From Octopus sinensis (Eukaryota): DNA of 7,165 bases. Below are positions 621 through 7,165 of this stretch, piece after piece; position 1 is the stretch's first letter; every line of letters begins with the position of its first letter. The stretch is taken from assembly GCF_006345805.1 (NCBI RefSeq), contig NW_021828930.1, forward strand, positions 1 to 7,165, in the 5' to 3' direction. Position numbers and translations under genes: made by a program. The notes beneath the pieces were generated by a model. It searched no databases. It worked only from the letters and a program-made list of their open reading frames with translations, and was not told the DNA's origin.

Positions 621-718
621 AACATTGTTATATAAGTTTTAGACGAGACAAGAACATTCTGGAATGCTTTGGGTTAGAGAGATCAGAATTGACCTGCGCG
701 TTAAACATTATCATTTTT

Positions 719-858
719 CATCATCACGATGATGATGGACATCATCATCAACATCATCGTCGTCATCATCTTCATCATCAACATCATCATCATCATCATC
801 ATCTTCATCATCATCATCGTCATCGTCATCATCAATATCATCATCAACATCATCATCG

Positions 859-899
<41 letters not shown>

Positions 900-935
900 T
901 TCATCATCATCATCATCAACTTCCTCATCATCAGC

Positions 936-975
<40 letters not shown>

Positions 976-980: not shown

Positions 981-1184
981 TGTTTCTTTAATTATCCACA
1001 AGGGGCTAAACATAGAGGGGACAGACAAGGACAGACAGACGGATTAAGTCGATTACATCGAGCCCAGTGCGTGTCTGGTACTTGATTTATCAACCCCGAA
1101 ACGATGAAAGGCAAAGTCGACCTCGGCGGAATTTGAACTCAGAACGTAACGGCAGACGAAATACGGCTACGCAATTTCGCCTAG
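981..1184 (-). mobile_element. tRNA-derived SINE, 5'-truncated (A box missing), inside the ATC microsatellite
   Basis: B box (reverse GGAATTTGAAC, 1128-1138). Body closely matches 4811-4950 and tail (CCACAAGGGGCTAAACATAGAGGGGACAGACAAGG) matches 1987-2050. Match stops at ~1181, before the A box. Flanked by CAATATC at 974-980 and 1185-1191. Confidence 0.9.
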
Positions 1185-1276
1185 CAATATCGTCATCATC
1201 AACTTCGTCGTCATCATCCTCATCATCATGAATATCATCTTCATCATCATCATCGCCGTCGTCTTCGTCGTCGTCG

Positions 1277-1986: not shown

Positions 1987-2050
1987 TTTATTTCTTTACT
2001 ATACCCACAAGTGGCTAAACACAGAGGGGACAAACAAGGACAGACAAACG
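1987..2050 (-). mobile_element. SINE 3' tail (left half of the SINE interrupted by the LTR element)
   Basis: TTTCTTTACTATACCCACAAGTGGCTAAACACAGAGGGGACAAACAAGGACAGACAAACG aligns with 983-1041 and stops exactly at the LTR start. Confidence 0.88.
2047..2050. repeat. Left target-site duplication AACG
   Basis: AACG immediately before the LTR TG; repeated at 4807-4810. Confidence 0.9.
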
Positions 2051-2145
2051 TGTAGTGATATTATAACGGTGCGCGCGCGCGCGCCGTCCATTTGTATTTC
2101 GCGCGTGTTGGTGCCTTTACCAAGGCAGAGAAAGGAAGGGCCCTC

Positions 2146-2159
2146 TCGCGCATGCGCGA
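2146..2159. promoter_or_regulatory. 14-bp perfect palindrome TCGCGCATGCGCGA containing an NRF1-type GCGCATGCGC motif (second copy 4298-4311)
   Basis: Palindrome is directly visible. The factor assignment is by consensus match only; binding is untested. Confidence 0.45.
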
Positions 2160-2378
2160 ACCACCGGAAGCACGACCCGCTTGCCTATTGTGGTGGTTAG
2201 CGAGGCAAGGGGGCCGTAGAACGTTTGACCACTAGTAGCAGCAGCGGGAACTTGGGACCCAGCGATTGACGGCGACAGTCACGCATATATTCTCTCCGTC
2301 TGAACTGATTCTAGCAGTCCTTTGGCCGAAGACTTTTAACCAAAATTGTTGCAGACCAACATCGTCTCCATTGTTCGA

Positions 2379-2388
2379 CGCCATCTTG
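2379..2388 (+). promoter_or_regulatory. YY1-type motif CGCCATCTTG in LTR (second copy 4531-4540)
   Basis: Matches the CGCCATnTT YY1 consensus; sequence match only. Confidence 0.4.
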
Positions 2389-2510
2389 GACCCTTTCTGT
2401 TTTCATCGGCTGGACATTGTAAATATTACAATCTATTAACTTTCAGCCTTGCGCGCCCGAATCAAGGACATCAGATAACACACTTATTGTTATTGTTTAC
2501 CAAGAAAGAG

Positions 2511-2516
2511 AATAAA
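2511..2516 (+). promoter_or_regulatory. LTR polyadenylation signal AATAAA (would act in the 3' LTR, 4663-4668)
   Basis: AATAAA ~140 nt before the LTR end, followed by GT/T-rich sequence (TGCGTCTTGTTGTTTCTG), the usual layout at an R/U5 boundary. Confidence 0.6.
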
Positions 2517-2659
2517 GTAGTTATATGTATATTTTACGTCTGCGTCTTGTTGTTTCTGACTAGTAGAATTCTGGAGCGATTAAAGCAACGGCTAGTGAGT
2601 GATTGCTTTGTGCACCAAAAGTGCACGAGGATACACACTCACACGAAGTTCGTTACAAG

Positions 2660-2680
2660 TGGTGACCTCCCGACGTGATT
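2660..2680 (+). promoter_or_regulatory. Primer-binding site complementary to the tRNA-Trp 3' end, with a 2-nt insertion
   Basis: TGGTGACC-TC-CCGACGTGATT versus TGGTGACCCCGACGTGATT, the reverse complement of the animal tRNA-Trp(CCA) 3' end as I recall it (...AATCACGTCGGGGTCA+CCA). Starts 2 nt after the LTR terminal CA. Confidence 0.8.
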
Positions 2681-4191
2681 CTGGTCTAAAACCAGAGATC
2701 ACTTATCAACAAAAAAATCCAGTTTTTCTGCGAAGTCGGAACACGATTTAACACTACGCATTCATCTTTCGACGATTTGTTTCCGGCCACCACAAACAGT
2801 TATATAGAAGGAGCCTTTTATTCTTCACCATGATGACGGACGCCATCACATCATCGATGCTATTTCTCTGCCTTCGTCATCATCATCGTCGTCTTAGAAC
2901 TTCACGTCGTCGCTATCTTCGTCGCCATCATCACTGAGAACGATGTTGTCCCAAGTCCACTACAGTCGCCTTCCACCACCATCGTCGCCTTTCAACACCG
3001 TCGACCTCCACAAGATGTACATAGCAACTCGCGGAACTTTGGCGTGCACGCTGTATGTGCATATGGCACCAAGGATTCACAGCACCGTCTATCTACGAGA
3101 TTTCTTCTGTTCCAGTTAACCTGTCACAGCATTGAAGCCACAACCGCTACACATTGTGTTCAACCGGCATCTGCATTTTGTGATTTCAACATTTCTGTTA
3201 CAGAACGAACTGCTATTGTACATCAGGCTATCACAGACTGGTAAATTAATTCTTGTCTGAGATAGCACTTGAGAGACATTTTTTTCTATGCGCTGTTTTT
3301 ATATTTTGCTCGCATTCACCTTGTATGTATTTCTGTCGCACACACGTACACACACATAAATGCTCTCTCTCACATACATACGTCACACATGCTTTTCTCG
3401 CTTGTTTTTTTTCCCATGCTGAATTTGCCTTTTGTGGACACCCCTCATTTCTATAGACCCTAGGTCGGTCACGTATACATAGAGAGGGTTGTTTGTCCAT
3501 TATAACGCGCCAGCATGTCATACTTTTGTTCCTGTGCGAACGAGGCATATAATCGCTCAACCACTGGCATATTCTTGCTGTTTTTTGGTCTGGCAAGCAC
3601 TGTTGCATTTCATGCGCCTATTGCTTCGCACGTGTACTTGCCTTGTTTTTGCAACACGTTTTGCGTTAGCTTGATTTCTTTTCCCGACTCATGTCGGATG
3701 TTCATATGCGCTGCGCCATGTTTAGGCGTAATTATTTTTCCCTGTTAGACCCTTGTTGGTCACGTAATTAACAGAAAATTATCTGTGTCGCGCATCACAC
3801 CGGCATGTTTGCACTTTTGCCTTTTGTGTTACTAGCGATCTTCTGTCAATTCCATTTCCTCTCCTGCAGCAATTGATTTAACTGCTATTTTGCAGGATCA
3901 ACTACCTTTAGAGAAGTTGGATTTTAATTTCGCCTAGGTACATCAACTGTGAGTTTTGCTTTTCCCTCCGCTCCTTTCAGCGGAAGGGTTTATATTTTTG
4001 TGACGTATACACTTTCATGCATGCACTCTTGATTTTTGCTCATTGTGTATTTTTTTTCTCTTTTTCCTTTAGTAAATTTCTTGTGTATGTTATAAATTTT
4101 GCCATGATATTATTGTGTGCTATTTGGTTATCTGGTGTCCACCTTGAGTTTTGCAGTCACTACAATAAGTTTCCTTTCGTGCGTACGCACT

Positions 4192-4200
4192 GGAGGGGAG
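4192..4200 (+). promoter_or_regulatory. Polypurine tract GGAGGGGAG
   Basis: Purine run ending 2 nt (CC) before the 3' LTR TG. Confidence 0.8.
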
Positions 4201-4202
4201 CC

Positions 4203-4806
4203 TGTAGTGATATTATAACGGTGCGCGCGCGCGCGCCGTCCATTTGTATTTCGCGCGTGTTGGTGCCTTTACCAAGGCAGAGAAAGGAAGGGCCCTCTCG
4301 CGCATGCGCGAACCACCGGAAGCACGACCCGCTTGCCTATCGTGGTGGTTAGCGAGGCAAGGGGGCCGTAGAACGTTTGACCACTAGTAGCAGCAGCGGG
4401 GACTTGGGACCCAGCGATTGACGGCGACAGTCACGCATATATTCTCTCCGTCTGAACTGATTCTAGCAGTCCTTTGGCCGAAGACTTTTAACCAAAATTG
4501 TTGCAGACCAACATCGTCTCCATTGTTCGACGCCATCTTGGACCCTTTCTGTTTTCATCGGCTGGACATTGTAAATATTACAATCTATTAACTTTCAGCC
4601 TTGCGCGCCCGAATCAAGGACATCAGATAACACACTTATTGTTATTGTTTACCAAGAAAGAGAATAAAGTAGTTATATGTATATTTTACGTCTGCGTCTT
4701 GTTGTTTCTGACTAGTAGAATTCTGGAGCGATTAAAGCAACGGCTAGTGAGTGATTGCTTTGTGCACCCCAAAAGTGCACGAGGATTCACACGAAGTTCG
4801 TTTACA
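4203..4806 (+). repeat. 3' LTR (604 bp)
   Basis: Direct repeat of 2051-2657 at offset 2152; starts TGTAGTG, ends CGTTTACA. Confidence 0.95.
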
Positions 4807-4810
4807 AACG
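4807..4810. repeat. Right target-site duplication AACG
   Basis: AACG immediately after the terminal CA; matches 2047-2050. Confidence 0.9.
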
Positions 4811-4981
4811 TATTAAGTTGATTATATCGGCCCCAGTGCGTAACTGGTACTTATTTAATCGACCCCGAAAGGATGAAAGGCAAAGTCGACCTCGGCGGAA
4901 TTTGAACTCACAACGTAACGGCAGACGAAGTACCGCAAAGCATTTCGCCCGGTGTGCTAACGCTTCTGCCAGCTCGCCGCC
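4811..4981 (-). mobile_element. tRNA-derived SINE head and body (right half of the interrupted SINE)
   Basis: On the minus strand: GGCGGCGAGC, A-box-like TGGCAGAAGCGTTAG (4957-4971), B box GTTCAAATTCC (4897-4907), GGCGG/CCGCC acceptor-stem-like pairing, then a body matching 1042-1181. Confidence 0.92.
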
Positions 4982-5030
4982 TTTTGTTGTATTATATAAT
5001 AACCGGGAAGGTGTCCCCGTCTCCGTTGTT

Positions 5031-5131
5031 GGCAAAGTCGACCTCGGCGGAATTTGAACTCAGAACGTAACGGCAGACGAATTATGGCTACGCATTTCGC
5101 CCGGCGTGCTAACGTTTCTGCCAGCTCGCCG
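5031..5131 (-). mobile_element. SINE head-only fragment (tRNA-like region with A and B boxes, 3'-truncated)
   Basis: GGCAAAGTCGACCTCGGCGGAATTTGAACTC...CTGCCAGCTCGCCG is a near copy of 4879-4979; similarity ends abruptly at 5031. Confidence 0.9.
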
Positions 5132-5195
5132 ACATCATATAGGAATTCTGACAAGTTCTTTTAAACCAGCATAGTTGCAGGTCACACATTTGTGC

Positions 5196-5224: not shown

Positions 5225-5340
5225 TTAAAATATCGGACGGAAACCTCGGGGGATAGGAATTGACAATTTCTACTTCCAAGATACTATTGAACAACCTGAA
5301 GTTATGCCAGTTGAAAACACGCACGTGGCGCGTATGTAAG

Positions 5341-5410
5341 TGTACGTGTGTGCGTGTGTACGTGTGTGTGTGTGTGTGTATGTGTGTGTGTGTGTGTGTG
5401 TGTATGTGTG

Positions 5411-5450
<40 letters not shown>

Positions 5451-5688
5451 TGTGCATGTGTGCGTGTGTGTGTGGTTGTGTGTGTTTGTGCATGTGTGTA
5501 TGTGTTGTATGTGTGTGTGTGTGTGTGGTGTGTATGTGTGTGTGCATGTGTGCATGTGTGTGTGTGTTGTGGGTGTGTGTGTGTATGGTGTGTGCATGTG
5601 TGCTTGTGTGTTGTGTGTGTGTGGTGTTGCATGTGTGTATGTGTGTATGTGTGTGTTGTGTGTGTGTGTATGTGTTTGTGCATGTGTG

Positions 5689-5724
<36 letters not shown>

Positions 5725-5831
5725 ATGTGTGTGTGTGCATGTGTGTGCGTGTGTGTGTGTGTGTGTGTGTGCATGTGTGTATGTGTGTATGTGTGTGTGT
5801 GTGTGTGTGTGTATGTGTGTGTGCATGTGTG

Positions 5832-5871
<40 letters not shown>

Positions 5872-5877
5872 TGTGCA

Positions 5878-5910
<33 letters not shown>
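5341..5910. repeat. Long imperfect (GT)n microsatellite with GCAT/GTAT variant units
   Basis: ~570 bp of GT units; source of the His-Thr and Cys-Val ORFs. Confidence 0.98.
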
Positions 5911-6059
5911 TTGCGGATGAAACAAGTGGGTGTGTAAGTTGGCATCATGCTTCGAAGAAATTAGATAGAAACGACGAAAACATATATAACGAAAAAGCAA
6001 AGAGAGAAATCCGCCCCCTCCGTCAGCAGTCTAGCTTATGAAATATTTATTCATATATA

Positions 6060-6088
6060 CGAGGGGCGTTCAATAAGTAATGCCCCTG
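6060..6088 (+). repeat. Left terminal inverted repeat of mariner (partner outside window)
   Basis: Follows TA at 6058-6059 and resembles the (TA)CGAGGG start of many mariner TIRs. Exact start and length cannot be fixed without the right end. Confidence 0.65.
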
Positions 6089-6149
6089 ACCCACTTGCAG
6101 TTAATTGTGGTTTCCGGTTTACAGGTGTTTGAACTGAGTCAAGTGTGAA

Positions 6150-7165
6150 ATGGAGCCTGTTGAGTGTCGAGCAGTGATCCGGTTTTGTATTTGAAAGGAC
6201 GCACACCACGGGAGACTTTTGATGAAAAGAAAGTAACTTATGGTGATGATGCCCCATCATATGACCTTGTAAAACGCTGGCATCGTGAATTCAAACATGG
6301 TCGGAACTCTGTGGAAACAGCTCCCAGATCTGGTCGCACCCCTTCTGCCATTGATGAGGCATCTGTCTGTCAAGTTGAGGCTGCTATTTTGGAAGATCGA
6401 CGCATAACTATTCGCCAAATAGCCCATGAGGTCAAGATTAGTACCGGGTCTGTGAAAACTATCATTCATGACCATTTGCATATGCAAAAGGTGTCTGCCA
6501 GATGGATTCCCAGGTTGCTCACACCTTTCCAGAAGCAAGAACGCGTCGATTGTTCGAGGATGAATTTGGAGATGTGCCAAGAAGATGAGTCAAAATTTTT
6601 CAAAAGTCTGATTGCATAGGATAAAACCTGGGTCCATCACTATGATCCAGAGACCAAATCCCAGTCAATGCAGTGGAAGCACCGTGACTCACCTCCTCCA
6701 AAGAAGGCAAGGGTGTAGCCCTCCGCTGGCAAGGTCATGCTTACAGTCTTCTGGGACCAGGACGGAGTAGTGAAGACAGATTTCCTGGCAAAGGGTGCCA
6801 CAATTACAGGAGTCTATTATGCTTCACTTTTGAGGAATTAAGAGAAGCTATCAATCAAGAGGCGGGGCAAGATCAGCAAAGGCATCCTCCTCCTGCAGGA
6901 CAACGCTCCGATCCACAACTCGCGTGTCGCCAGATCAGAAGCCAGGCGTGCGGCTATGAACTCATCCCCCATCCCCCTACTCTCCTGACCTTGCACTCTC
7001 TGATTTTCACCTCTTCCCAGCCATGAAGTTGTTTTTGAAAGGAGCGTTTCCCAGATGATGCAGCCTTGATTTCTGAAGTCACGTAGTGGTTGGAGGACCA
7101 AGCTGGGGTCTTCTACAAAAACGGTCTCAGAGCTGCATCAAACGATGGGAGAAAATGCGTAACTC
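6150..7165 (+). pseudogene. Mariner transposase pseudogene
   Basis: ATG at 6150 (MEPVECRAVIRF), -1 shift in the T run 6183-6186, HTH region to WIPRLL (WVPHEL equivalent). Then TAG 6617-6619, D1 in DKTWVHHYDPE (6620), TAG 6716-6718, KVMLTVFWD, D2 in LLLQDNAPIH (6899), and YSPDLALSDFHLF with D3 (7002). After correcting two -1 shifts, 34 residues separate D2 and D3. Further TAG at 7084-7086 and several 1-2 nt indels. Confidence 0.95.

What the first reader, a model, noticed from the sequence alone, without database searches (positions are those of the whole stretch)
2051..4806. Young, non-coding LTR retroelement with a complete set of cis signals
Seen: TG...CA LTRs of 607 and 604 bp, TSD, PBS, PPT and AATAAA are all present, yet the 1545-bp interior has only short ORFs with no gag/pol motif I can recognise. 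Established: the two LTRs are identical at insertion, and non-autonomous LTR elements (TRIM, LARD) are mobilised in trans. This one has LTRs longer than typical TRIMs and a total size smaller than typical LARDs, classes described mostly from plants. Inference: a recently active parasite of an autonomous tRNA-Trp-primed retrotransposon. It may be an undescribed family, but I cannot check databases.
Basis: partly seen in the sequence, partly recalled or inferred. Interest (0 to 1): 0.7.

Follow-up and report, generated by a model that had tools for sequence, protein, structure and literature searches.

The report
Young non-coding LTR retrotransposon in octopus
This is a real, recently inserted, complete but protein-less LTR retrotransposon copy sitting inside a SINE in an octopus-type genome; it is an ordinary example of a known kind of element that must borrow enzymes from a coding relative.

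Summary
Two direct LTRs (2051-2657, 607 nt; 4203-4806, 604 nt; TG...CA) differ by 2 transitions and 3 small slippage-type indels. A 4-bp duplication (AACG) flanks them. The flanks rejoin without a gap into a SINE copy, which shows the empty site.

A tRNA-Trp primer-binding site lies 2 nt after the 5' LTR, but it carries a 2-nt insertion. The only purine run of 9 nt or more in the interior (GGAGGGGAG) ends 2 nt before the 3' LTR. AATAAA is in the LTR.

The 1545-bp interior shows no sign of coding. Six-frame Pfam scans gave nothing, retroelement motifs are absent, and the longest open frame is no longer than chance predicts and has no homologue.

The insertion is young, roughly 0.5 My (0.06-1.7), so decay after insertion cannot explain the missing genes. 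Most likely the RNA was already non-coding and was copied in trans by a helper, probably Ty3-like.

The SINE places the window in an octopod genome. Copy number, the helper and catalogue status could not be tested, because no searchable collection holds the source genome.

The "between TRIM and LARD" size is a documented continuum, not a novelty. Verdict: new member of a known kind, low to moderate interest.

The parts
2002..2050 (-). Left half of the SINE copy that was the insertion target. The SINE's tRNA-like head lies on the minus strand.
   Evidence: Aligns to the intact SINE copy at 993-1041 at 90% identity. It is continuous with the right half once the element and one AACG are removed.
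2047..2050 (.). Target-site duplication, left copy (AACG)
2051..2657 (+). 5' LTR, 607 nt, TG...CA. Inferred layout: U3 about 2051-2315, R about 2315-2535, U5 about 2536-2657.
   Evidence: Alignment to the 3' LTR shows 2 substitutions and 3 indels. The U3/R/U5 boundaries are inferred from the TATA-like and AATAAA positions.
2072..2159 (+). CpG-rich part of U3. It holds a (CG)6 run at 2072-2083 and the palindrome TCGCGCATGCGCGA at 2146-2159, which resembles an NRF1 site.
   Evidence: motifs. CpG observed/expected is 1.29 in the first 250 nt of the LTR against 0.82 in the flanks. The link to NRF1 is from my own knowledge and is untested.
2284..2291 (+). TATA-like box CATATATA, the candidate core promoter
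   Evidence: CATATA match at 2284; the remaining bases are read from the sequence. Its function is inferred.
2511..2516 (+). AATAAA polyadenylation signal, followed by the GT-rich stretch 2538-2558. The working copy would be the one in the 3' LTR at 4663-4668.
   Evidence: sequence read
2660..2680 (+). Primer-binding site complementary to the 3' end of tRNA-Trp, with a 2-nt insertion (TC, about 2668-2669)
   Evidence: Sequence. The tRNA-Trp antisense sequence is printed in PMC6379413.
2675..2702 (+). Stem-loop overlapping the 3' end of the PBS (GUGAUUCUGGU-CUAAA-ACCAGAGAUCAC)
   Evidence: Present in both the MFE and the centroid fold of 2640-2830. The whole leader is only weakly better than shuffles (z = -1.85). 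A role in packaging or dimerisation is speculation.
2658..4202 (+). Non-coding interior, 1545 nt. Its sense strand is T-rich (35% T, 22% A). It contains degenerate microsatellite-like stretches at 2816-2933 (CAT/CGT) and 3337-3392 (CA).
4192..4200 (+). Polypurine tract GGAGGGGAG, ending 2 nt before the 3' LTR
   Evidence: It is the only purine run of 9 nt or more in the interior.
4203..4806 (+). 3' LTR, 604 nt
4807..4810 (.). Target-site duplication, right copy (AACG)
4807..4990 (-). Right half of the target SINE copy
   Evidence: 87% identical to 1035-1176; alignments

Best explanation
[quoted passage not shown] It was already protein-less when it was reverse-transcribed, and it was mobilised in trans by the Gag, reverse transcriptase/RNase H and integrase of a coding LTR element in the same octopod genome. 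That helper was most likely Ty3/gypsy-like.

Proposed mechanism:
1. RNA polymerase II starts in the 5' LTR, downstream of the TATA-like box near 2284, and the transcript is polyadenylated after the AATAAA of the 3' LTR. This gives an R-U5-PBS-interior-PPT-U3-R RNA.
2. The helper's particles package this RNA.
3. tRNA-Trp anneals to the PBS (2660-2680) and primes minus-strand DNA.
4. The polypurine tract at 4192-4200 primes plus-strand DNA.
5. The two strand transfers regenerate identical LTRs.
6. The helper's integrase joins the TG...CA ends across a 4-bp staggered cut inside a SINE, which produces the AACG duplication.

Shown here: the anatomy, the duplication and empty site, the youth of the insertion, and the absence of coding capacity. 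Inferred: transcription, packaging, trans-complementation, and the identity of the helper.
For: - All cis elements are in the canonical order and spacing.
- Integration is proven by the 4-bp duplication and by gapless reconstitution of the SINE target.
- The LTRs differ by only 2 substitutions in about 596 aligned nt (K = 0.0034). At about 0.0036 substitutions/site/My (JC 0.09 = 25 My, as quoted in PMC13282606) this gives about 0.47 My, with a Poisson range of 0.06-1.7 My. The interior therefore cannot have decayed from gag-pol since insertion.
- The interior has no Pfam hit in six frames at E<=10 and no retroelement motifs.
- Its longest open frame is no longer than chance predicts (P = 0.29).
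- That frame lies where gag would start, yet it found only two translated tandem-repeat artefacts among 1.84 billion representative proteins.
- The interior's sense strand is pyrimidine-rich and carries microsatellite-like stretches. This is unlike coding or UTR sequence of typical retroelements, which are A-rich by my own knowledge.
- In Octopus vulgaris, recent LTR activity exists and is almost entirely Ty3-like: 147 of 153 recent insertions (PMC13282606).
- A 4-bp TSD is what animal Gypsy-dependent TRIMs make (PMC10886601).
Against: - Only this one copy has been seen, so neither a family nor a helper is demonstrated.
- No LTR or interior match was found in about 117 kb of Octopus bimaculoides and O. 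sinensis DNA. That sample is tiny and only excludes tens of thousands of copies.
- The PBS has a 2-nt insertion relative to tRNA-Trp, which would bulge the primer duplex.
- The PPT is separated from the LTR by 2 nt (CC).
- The octopus tRNA-Trp sequence itself was not available. The comparison uses the human sequence and assumes conservation.
- The helper's superfamily cannot be read from cis signals alone.
Confidence: 0.6

Rival explanations
1. This is a one-off, internally deleted copy of an autonomous element. A single deletion removed all of gag-pol and left only the 5' leader and 3' untranslated sequence. The deletion arose either by template switching during reverse transcription (dead on arrival) or in the genome shortly after insertion. 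On this reading it is not a propagating family.
For: Internal deletion derivatives are the most common defective LTR copies; for example, most defective elements found by LTR_STRUC in Culex relate to an active family (PMC3286476). Only one copy is seen here. Some insect Ty3/gypsy elements have long leaders (my own knowledge).
Against: Both breakpoints would have to fall in untranslated sequence, and those UTRs would have to add up to 1545 nt. In a copy this young, any retained piece of gag or integrase should still be recognisable, yet none is. The T-rich, microsatellite-bearing composition does not look like retroelement UTRs.
Confidence: 0.27
2. This was an autonomous element whose genes decayed by point mutation after insertion.
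For: None beyond the absence of ORFs.
Against: The LTRs are 99.7% identical at substitutions. The interior evolves at the same neutral rate, so it should be about 99.8% intact, yet it has 15-30 stops per frame and no domain hit. At 2.76 kb the element is also far too short to have held gag-pol.
Confidence: 0.01
3. This is not one element. It is either two independent solo LTRs that happen to bracket host DNA, or an assembly artefact that duplicated a repeat.
For: The three LTR indels all lie in slippage or homopolymer contexts and could be sequencing or assembly errors.
Against: The PBS sits 2 nt inside the 5' LTR and the PPT 2 nt inside the 3' LTR. The outer flanks carry one matching 4-bp duplication and rejoin into one SINE. 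Two separate insertions or a collapsed assembly would not produce this.
Confidence: 0.03

Closest known systems
TRIM / LARD non-autonomous LTR retrotransposons (first described in plants; TRIMs also reported in hymenopterans, cestodes and bivalves)
   Same: Two LTRs, PBS, PPT and TSD, no coding capacity, and presumed mobilisation in trans by an autonomous LTR element (PMC10886601, PMC13570524).
   Different: At 2756 nt with about 605-nt LTRs it is above the strict TRIM limit (<1 kb, or <1.5 kb) and below the LARD limit (>4 kb). That gap is only terminological, because 1.5-4 kb non-coding families are common in sugar beet (PMC13570524). No sequence relationship was tested.
cqUNK non-coding LTR elements of Culex quinquefasciatus
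   Same: Animal elements of about 3 kb (for example cqUNK_1, 2994 bp) with LTRs, a tRNA-type PBS and a TSD, no ORFs and no recognisable master copy (PMC3286476).
   Different: Those elements carry long internal tandem repeats, have 5-bp TSDs and shorter LTRs (about 210-340 bp), and use other tRNAs. Here there are only short degenerate microsatellite-like stretches, a 4-bp TSD and a tRNA-Trp PBS.
MaLR (mammalian apparent LTR retrotransposons)
   Same: Mid-sized animal elements of roughly 2-3 kb with LTRs of a few hundred bp and a largely non-coding interior, thought to depend on ERV-L machinery (my own knowledge; MaLRs are cited as an analogue in PMC3286476).
   Different: MaLRs are a mammalian lineage related to ERV-L. 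There is no evidence of any relationship, and the host here is a mollusc.
Helenus / Ajax / Cassandra (TRIMs with a Pol III promoter, 'TRIMp3')
   Same: Non-autonomous LTR elements. Animal Helenus elements, including one family in the oyster Crassostrea gigas, make 4-bp TSDs (PMC10886601).
   Different: Those have a tRNA- or 5S-derived sequence inside the LTR and are 1.3 kb or shorter. ARAGORN and Rfam find no tRNA or 5S-like sequence in these LTRs.
Ty3/gypsy-like LTR retrotransposons of Octopus (candidate helpers)
   Same: They are the only LTR group with appreciable recent activity in O. vulgaris: 9 families and 147 recent insertions (PMC13282606). A 4-bp TSD and TG...CA ends are compatible with them.
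   Different: This copy has no RT or integrase with which to place it in that superfamily, and no helper sequence could be retrieved for comparison.

Membership tests
LTR retrotransposon (structural definition) | Two direct long terminal repeats ending in TG...CA | tested here: met
   LTRs of 607 and 604 nt with 2 substitutions and 3 indels; ends are TGTAGT...TTACA
LTR retrotransposon (structural definition) | Target-site duplication of 4-6 bp and a reconstructable empty site | tested here: met
   AACG on both sides. The joined flanks align without a gap to a paralogous SINE copy. The orthologous empty site in another individual or species was not available.
LTR retrotransposon (structural definition) | tRNA-complementary PBS next to the 5' LTR | tested here: met
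   19 nt complementary to the 3' end of tRNA-Trp, starting 2 nt after the LTR and interrupted by a 2-nt insertion. The octopus tRNA-Trp itself was not available.
LTR retrotransposon (structural definition) | Polypurine tract next to the 3' LTR | tested here: met
   GGAGGGGAG at 4192-4200 is the only purine run of 9 nt or more in the interior and ends 2 nt before the LTR
Non-autonomous LTR retrotransposon (TRIM/LARD continuum) | No gag/pol coding capacity | tested here: met
   Six-frame Pfam scan at E<=10 gave no hits. No motifs were found. The longest open frame fits chance and has no homologue.
Non-autonomous LTR retrotransposon (TRIM/LARD continuum) | Multiple copies with the same non-coding interior at different sites (a propagating family) | not testable with these tools
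   No collection holds the source genome. The LTR 21-mer and the SINE 28-mer control both gave 0 hits in the metagenome and prokaryote collections; the LTR 21-mer alone was also run against viral contigs. The protein database lacks ORFs from octopus repeats. About 117 kb of Octopus DNA gave no hit.
Non-autonomous LTR retrotransposon (TRIM/LARD continuum) | An autonomous partner sharing LTR ends, PBS or leader | not testable with these tools
   No helper sequence could be retrieved.
TRIM (strict definition) | Total length under 1 kb (extended definition under 1.5 kb) with short LTRs | tested here: not met
   2756 nt in total with LTRs of about 605 nt. Thresholds are from PMC10886601 and PMC13570524.
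LARD (strict definition) | Total length over 4 kb | tested here: not met
   2756 nt. Threshold is from PMC13570524.
Helenus/Ajax/Cassandra (TRIMp3) | tRNA- or 5S rRNA-derived sequence inside the LTR | tested here: not met
   ARAGORN found 0 genes. Rfam at E<=1 gave no hit inside 2051-4806.
Ty3/gypsy superfamily | RT/RNase H/integrase phylogeny and PR-RT-RH-IN domain order | not testable with these tools
   The element has no coding sequence. Only the 4-bp TSD and the host's TE landscape (PMC13282606) point this way.

The most novel reading that the evidence does not exclude
The copy belongs to an uncatalogued family of mid-sized, wholly non-coding LTR elements in cephalopods. That family is still being mobilised, within the last ~0.5 My, by a tRNA-Trp-primed Ty3-like helper. 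Its interior derives from non-retroelement (host or other repeat) sequence rather than from a deleted gag-pol. This would show that LTR retrotransposition machinery is active in trans in octopus genomes, where LTR elements are a very small minority of repeats.
Probability: 0.4. Interest if true: 0.35.

Novelty: new member of a known kind. Interest (0 to 1): 0.22.

Why it matters
Octopus genomes are dominated by SINEs, LINEs and DNA transposons. In the O. vulgaris annotation, recently active LTR insertions number only about 150. A very young non-coding LTR copy with a clean integration signature therefore has two implications. A functional LTR-element reverse transcription and integration machinery was operating in this lineage within roughly the last million years. 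That machinery could also act on an RNA that encodes nothing. This is useful for repeat annotation, because such elements are usually left as "unknown" or mis-split into LTR and interior. It also provides a marker insertion for population or species comparisons. It does not change any concept: non-autonomous LTR elements of this size are already documented in plants and animals.

Tried and rejected
1. Copies via proteins. The 110-aa ORF spanning LTR and PBS (2346-2675) gave 0 hits among 5.8 billion proteins. Ten window ORFs are not in the collection. A control with a SINE-derived ORF also found nothing, so the database holds no ORF calls from octopus repeats. The null says nothing about copy number.

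2. Copies via DNA. The 21-mer from the 5' end of the LTR gave 0 hits in metagenome, viral and prokaryote genome contigs. The SINE 28-mer control also gave 0 in the metagenome and genome collections. The source genome is therefore absent from those collections.

3. Gag remnant. The open frame 2837-3241 lies where gag would begin. It found only two translated tandem-repeat artefacts, and its length is expected by chance. Rejected.

4. Internal duplication. I suspected by eye that about 3440-3530 repeats at about 3740-3830. Neither alignment nor BLAST supports this as significant. Rejected.

5. Structured RNA, tRNA-like or 5S-like content in the element: none found.

6. Source genome via the neighbouring mariner remnant. 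The best matches were a mantis shrimp and unidentified ENA/Logan contigs that lack the SINE. Octopus loci carry the SINE but not the LTR or interior.

7. Literature. No paper holds the SINE fragment, the run accession, or a description of octopus LTR elements with their PBS. The supplement of the O. vulgaris repeat paper held here is a short document, not a repeat library.

8. Splice signals. A GTAAAT follows the open frame at 3242, and polypyrimidine-CAG sites lie at about 3868 and 3893. In a T-rich sequence these are expected by chance, so I did not pursue them.
Full report
**Observation**

The window has two direct repeats, at 2051-2657 (607 nt) and 4203-4806 (604 nt). Both begin TGTAGTGA. 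They end GTTACA and GTTTACA, so both are TG...CA.

They differ by two transitions and three indels of 2, 6 and 1 nt. Every indel lies in a short homopolymer or dinucleotide context (CC, ACACAC, T). They may be real slippage events or assembly errors.

AACG lies immediately outside the repeats on both sides (2047-2050 and 4807-4810).

The flanks are the two halves of one SINE copy. The left flank joined to the right flank with a single AACG aligns without a gap across the junction to the intact SINE copy at 985-1180. With both AACG copies kept, the alignment needs a 4-nt gap exactly at the junction. This is direct evidence for an integrase-type insertion with a 4-bp staggered cut. It is much stronger than a 4-bp match alone.

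**Cis signals**

- PBS. Two nucleotides after the 5' LTR comes TGGTGACCTCCCGACGTGATT (2660-2680). The antisense of human tRNA-Trp, printed in PMC6379413, is TGGTGACCCCGACGTGATTTGAAC. The element therefore matches the first 19 nt of the tRNA's 3' end, apart from a 2-nt insertion after position 8.
- The insertion cannot reflect a normal tRNA, because it would lengthen one strand of the acceptor stem. It is either a mutation in this copy or one inherited from its template. Inheritance is possible because the minus-strand copy of the PBS comes from the RNA, which is established retroviral biology.
- PPT. The only purine run of 9 nt or more in the interior is GGAGGGGAG at 4192-4200, ending 2 nt before the 3' LTR.
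- LTR signals. The LTR carries one AATAAA (2511-2516), followed by a GT-rich stretch. It also has a TATA-like CATATATA at 2284 and a CpG-rich upstream part with a (CG)6 run and the palindrome TCGCGCATGCGCGA.
- From these I infer U3 at about 2051-2315, R at about 2315-2535 and U5 at about 2536-2657. These boundaries are inferences.
- A stem-loop at 2675-2702 overlaps the end of the PBS. The leader as a whole folds only marginally better than shuffles.

**Coding capacity**

- The interior (2658-4202, 1545 nt) has 15-17 stops per frame on the plus strand and 24-30 on the minus strand.
- All six frames, with stops masked, gave no Pfam family even at E<=10.
- No CCHC knuckle, YxDD, D[ST]G[AS] or HHCC pattern is present.
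- The longest open stretch is 135 codons (2837-3241), lying where gag would start. It is no longer than expected for sequence of this composition (P = 0.29 in 2000 first-order Markov simulations).
- An exhaustive HMMER search of that frame against 1.84 billion representative proteins returned only two weak hits. Both are translated tandem repeats.
- The interior's sense strand is pyrimidine-rich (35% T, 22% A). It contains degenerate CAT/CGT and CA microsatellite-like stretches.
- Rfam and ARAGORN find nothing in the element.

**Age, and what it implies**

Two substitutions in about 596 aligned positions give K = 0.0034. The calibration quoted for octopus TEs is JC 0.09 = 25 My and JC 0.2 = 56 My, or about 0.0036 per site per My (PMC13282606). 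With that rate the insertion is about 0.47 My old, with a Poisson range of 0.06-1.7 My.

The interior has had the same short time to change. The lack of genes therefore cannot be post-insertion decay. Either the RNA that was reverse-transcribed was already non-coding, so a non-autonomous element was mobilised in trans, or one clean deletion removed the whole of gag-pol.

The deletion scenario requires both breakpoints to lie in untranslated sequence and those UTRs to total 1.5 kb, with no recognisable coding remnant left in a very young copy. I therefore prefer trans-mobilisation (0.6) over a one-off deletion derivative (0.27).

The element cannot be two unrelated solo LTRs or an assembly artefact. 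The PBS and PPT sit at the inner LTR edges, and the outer flanks share one duplication.

**Host and context**

- The flanking SINE occurs many times in loci fetched from Octopus sinensis, with 18-19 BLAST hits per SINE query in each 20-kb locus and up to 93% identity. It also occurs in O. bimaculoides.
- It is absent from three non-octopus ENA loci that share only the mariner.
- The window therefore comes from an octopod genome. The species was not determined.
- In O. vulgaris, recently active LTR insertions are few: 153 insertions in 15 families, of which 147 are Ty3-like (PMC13282606). This is why I name a Ty3-like element as the most probable helper.
- The 4-bp TSD fits that choice. Animal Helenus TRIMs also make 4-bp TSDs, and Gypsy families of the oyster are discussed as possible partners (PMC10886601).
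- The superfamily cannot be proven from a copy without coding sequence.

**What could not be tested**

All need the source genome or Repbase/Dfam, and neither is available here.

- DNA scans with an LTR 21-mer found nothing in the metagenome, viral or prokaryote collections. A control 28-mer from the very abundant SINE, run on the metagenome and prokaryote collections, also found nothing.
- A protein search with the LTR-PBS ORF found nothing. A control with a SINE ORF also found nothing.
- These nulls are therefore uninformative.
- About 117 kb of non-N Octopus DNA contained no LTR or interior match. This only excludes copy numbers in the tens of thousands.

**Comparison with what is known**

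Functionally this is a TRIM/LARD-type element. It fails both strict size definitions, since TRIMs are under 1-1.5 kb and LARDs are over 4 kb. A 2026 survey of sugar beet shows that non-coding LTR elements form a continuum. It states that 1.5-4 kb families are common and merely lack a name (PMC13570524).

In animals, non-coding LTR elements of about 3 kb with PBS and TSD and without a recognisable master are described in Culex (PMC3286476). TRIMs are reported in hymenopterans, cestodes and bivalves (PMC10886601). MaLRs are a mid-sized mammalian analogue. The element is not a Helenus/Ajax/Cassandra type, because its LTRs hold no tRNA- or 5S-like sequence.

**Verdict**

The interpretation as a non-autonomous, recently mobilised element is reasonable and is my preferred explanation. 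Family status, the helper and "undescribed" remain open. The kind of element is well known, so the most this can be is a new member of a known kind. Interest is low to moderate.

Noticed in passing
window 2660-2680: The tRNA-Trp primer-binding site carries a 2-nt insertion (TC, about 2668-2669) relative to the tRNA 3' end. It splits the match into 8 + 11 nt. It is unclear whether this is a post-insertion mutation, was inherited from the template RNA, or is an assembly error.
   Followed up: partly
window 6057-7165 (runs off the end): A broken mariner/Mos1-type transposon (HTH_48 plus Transposase_1; longest ORF 151 aa, with in-frame stops). Its protein is 87% identical to a 'GVQW3-like' protein of the mantis shrimp Oratosquilla oratoria. 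Its DNA is 91-95% identical to contigs from unrelated ENA/Logan samples that lack the octopus SINE, but only about 70% identical to the copies sampled in O. bimaculoides and O. sinensis. This pattern suggests horizontal spread among marine invertebrates.
   Followed up: partly
window 985-1185, 2002-2050 + 4807-4990, 5030-5135, 290-400 (inverted), about 27-100: At least five full or partial copies of one tRNA-derived SINE lie in 7 kb. One served as the insertion target. The partial copy at 5030-5135 lies about 40 nt after the split one. The same SINE is abundant in the O. sinensis and O. bimaculoides loci, at up to 93% identity.
   Followed up: partly
window 715-975 and 1186-1325: The intact SINE copy at 985-1185 sits in the middle of a long imperfect (ATC)n microsatellite present on both sides. 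Either the SINE inserted into the microsatellite, or the array expanded around it.
   Followed up: no
window 5340-5910; also 133-212 and 537-600: Very long imperfect (TG)n array of about 570 nt, plus (TC)n and (CA)n arrays. The sub-threshold Rfam hits (mir-297, sR2, sR5) all fall in such repeats outside the element and are chance matches.
   Followed up: yes
window 2072-2159 (and 4224-4311 in the 3' LTR): The U3 part of the LTR is CpG-rich (observed/expected 1.29, against 0.82 in the flanks). It holds a perfect palindrome, TCGCGCATGCGCGA, that resembles an NRF1-type promoter element. One of the two LTR substitutions is a CpG-to-TpG change.
   Followed up: no
window 2614-2615, 2634-2639, about 2655 versus the 3' LTR: All three indels between the LTRs lie in slippage-prone contexts (CC, ACACAC, T run). 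Indels outnumber substitutions 3 to 2. This is unusual for real divergence and may reflect long-read assembly errors.
   Followed up: no
window 3242-3247, about 3855-3868, about 3880-3893: A GTAAAT directly follows the longest open stretch, and two polypyrimidine-CAG sites lie 620-650 nt downstream. Together they look like a donor/acceptor pair. In a T-rich sequence this is likely chance, and it was not tested.
   Followed up: no
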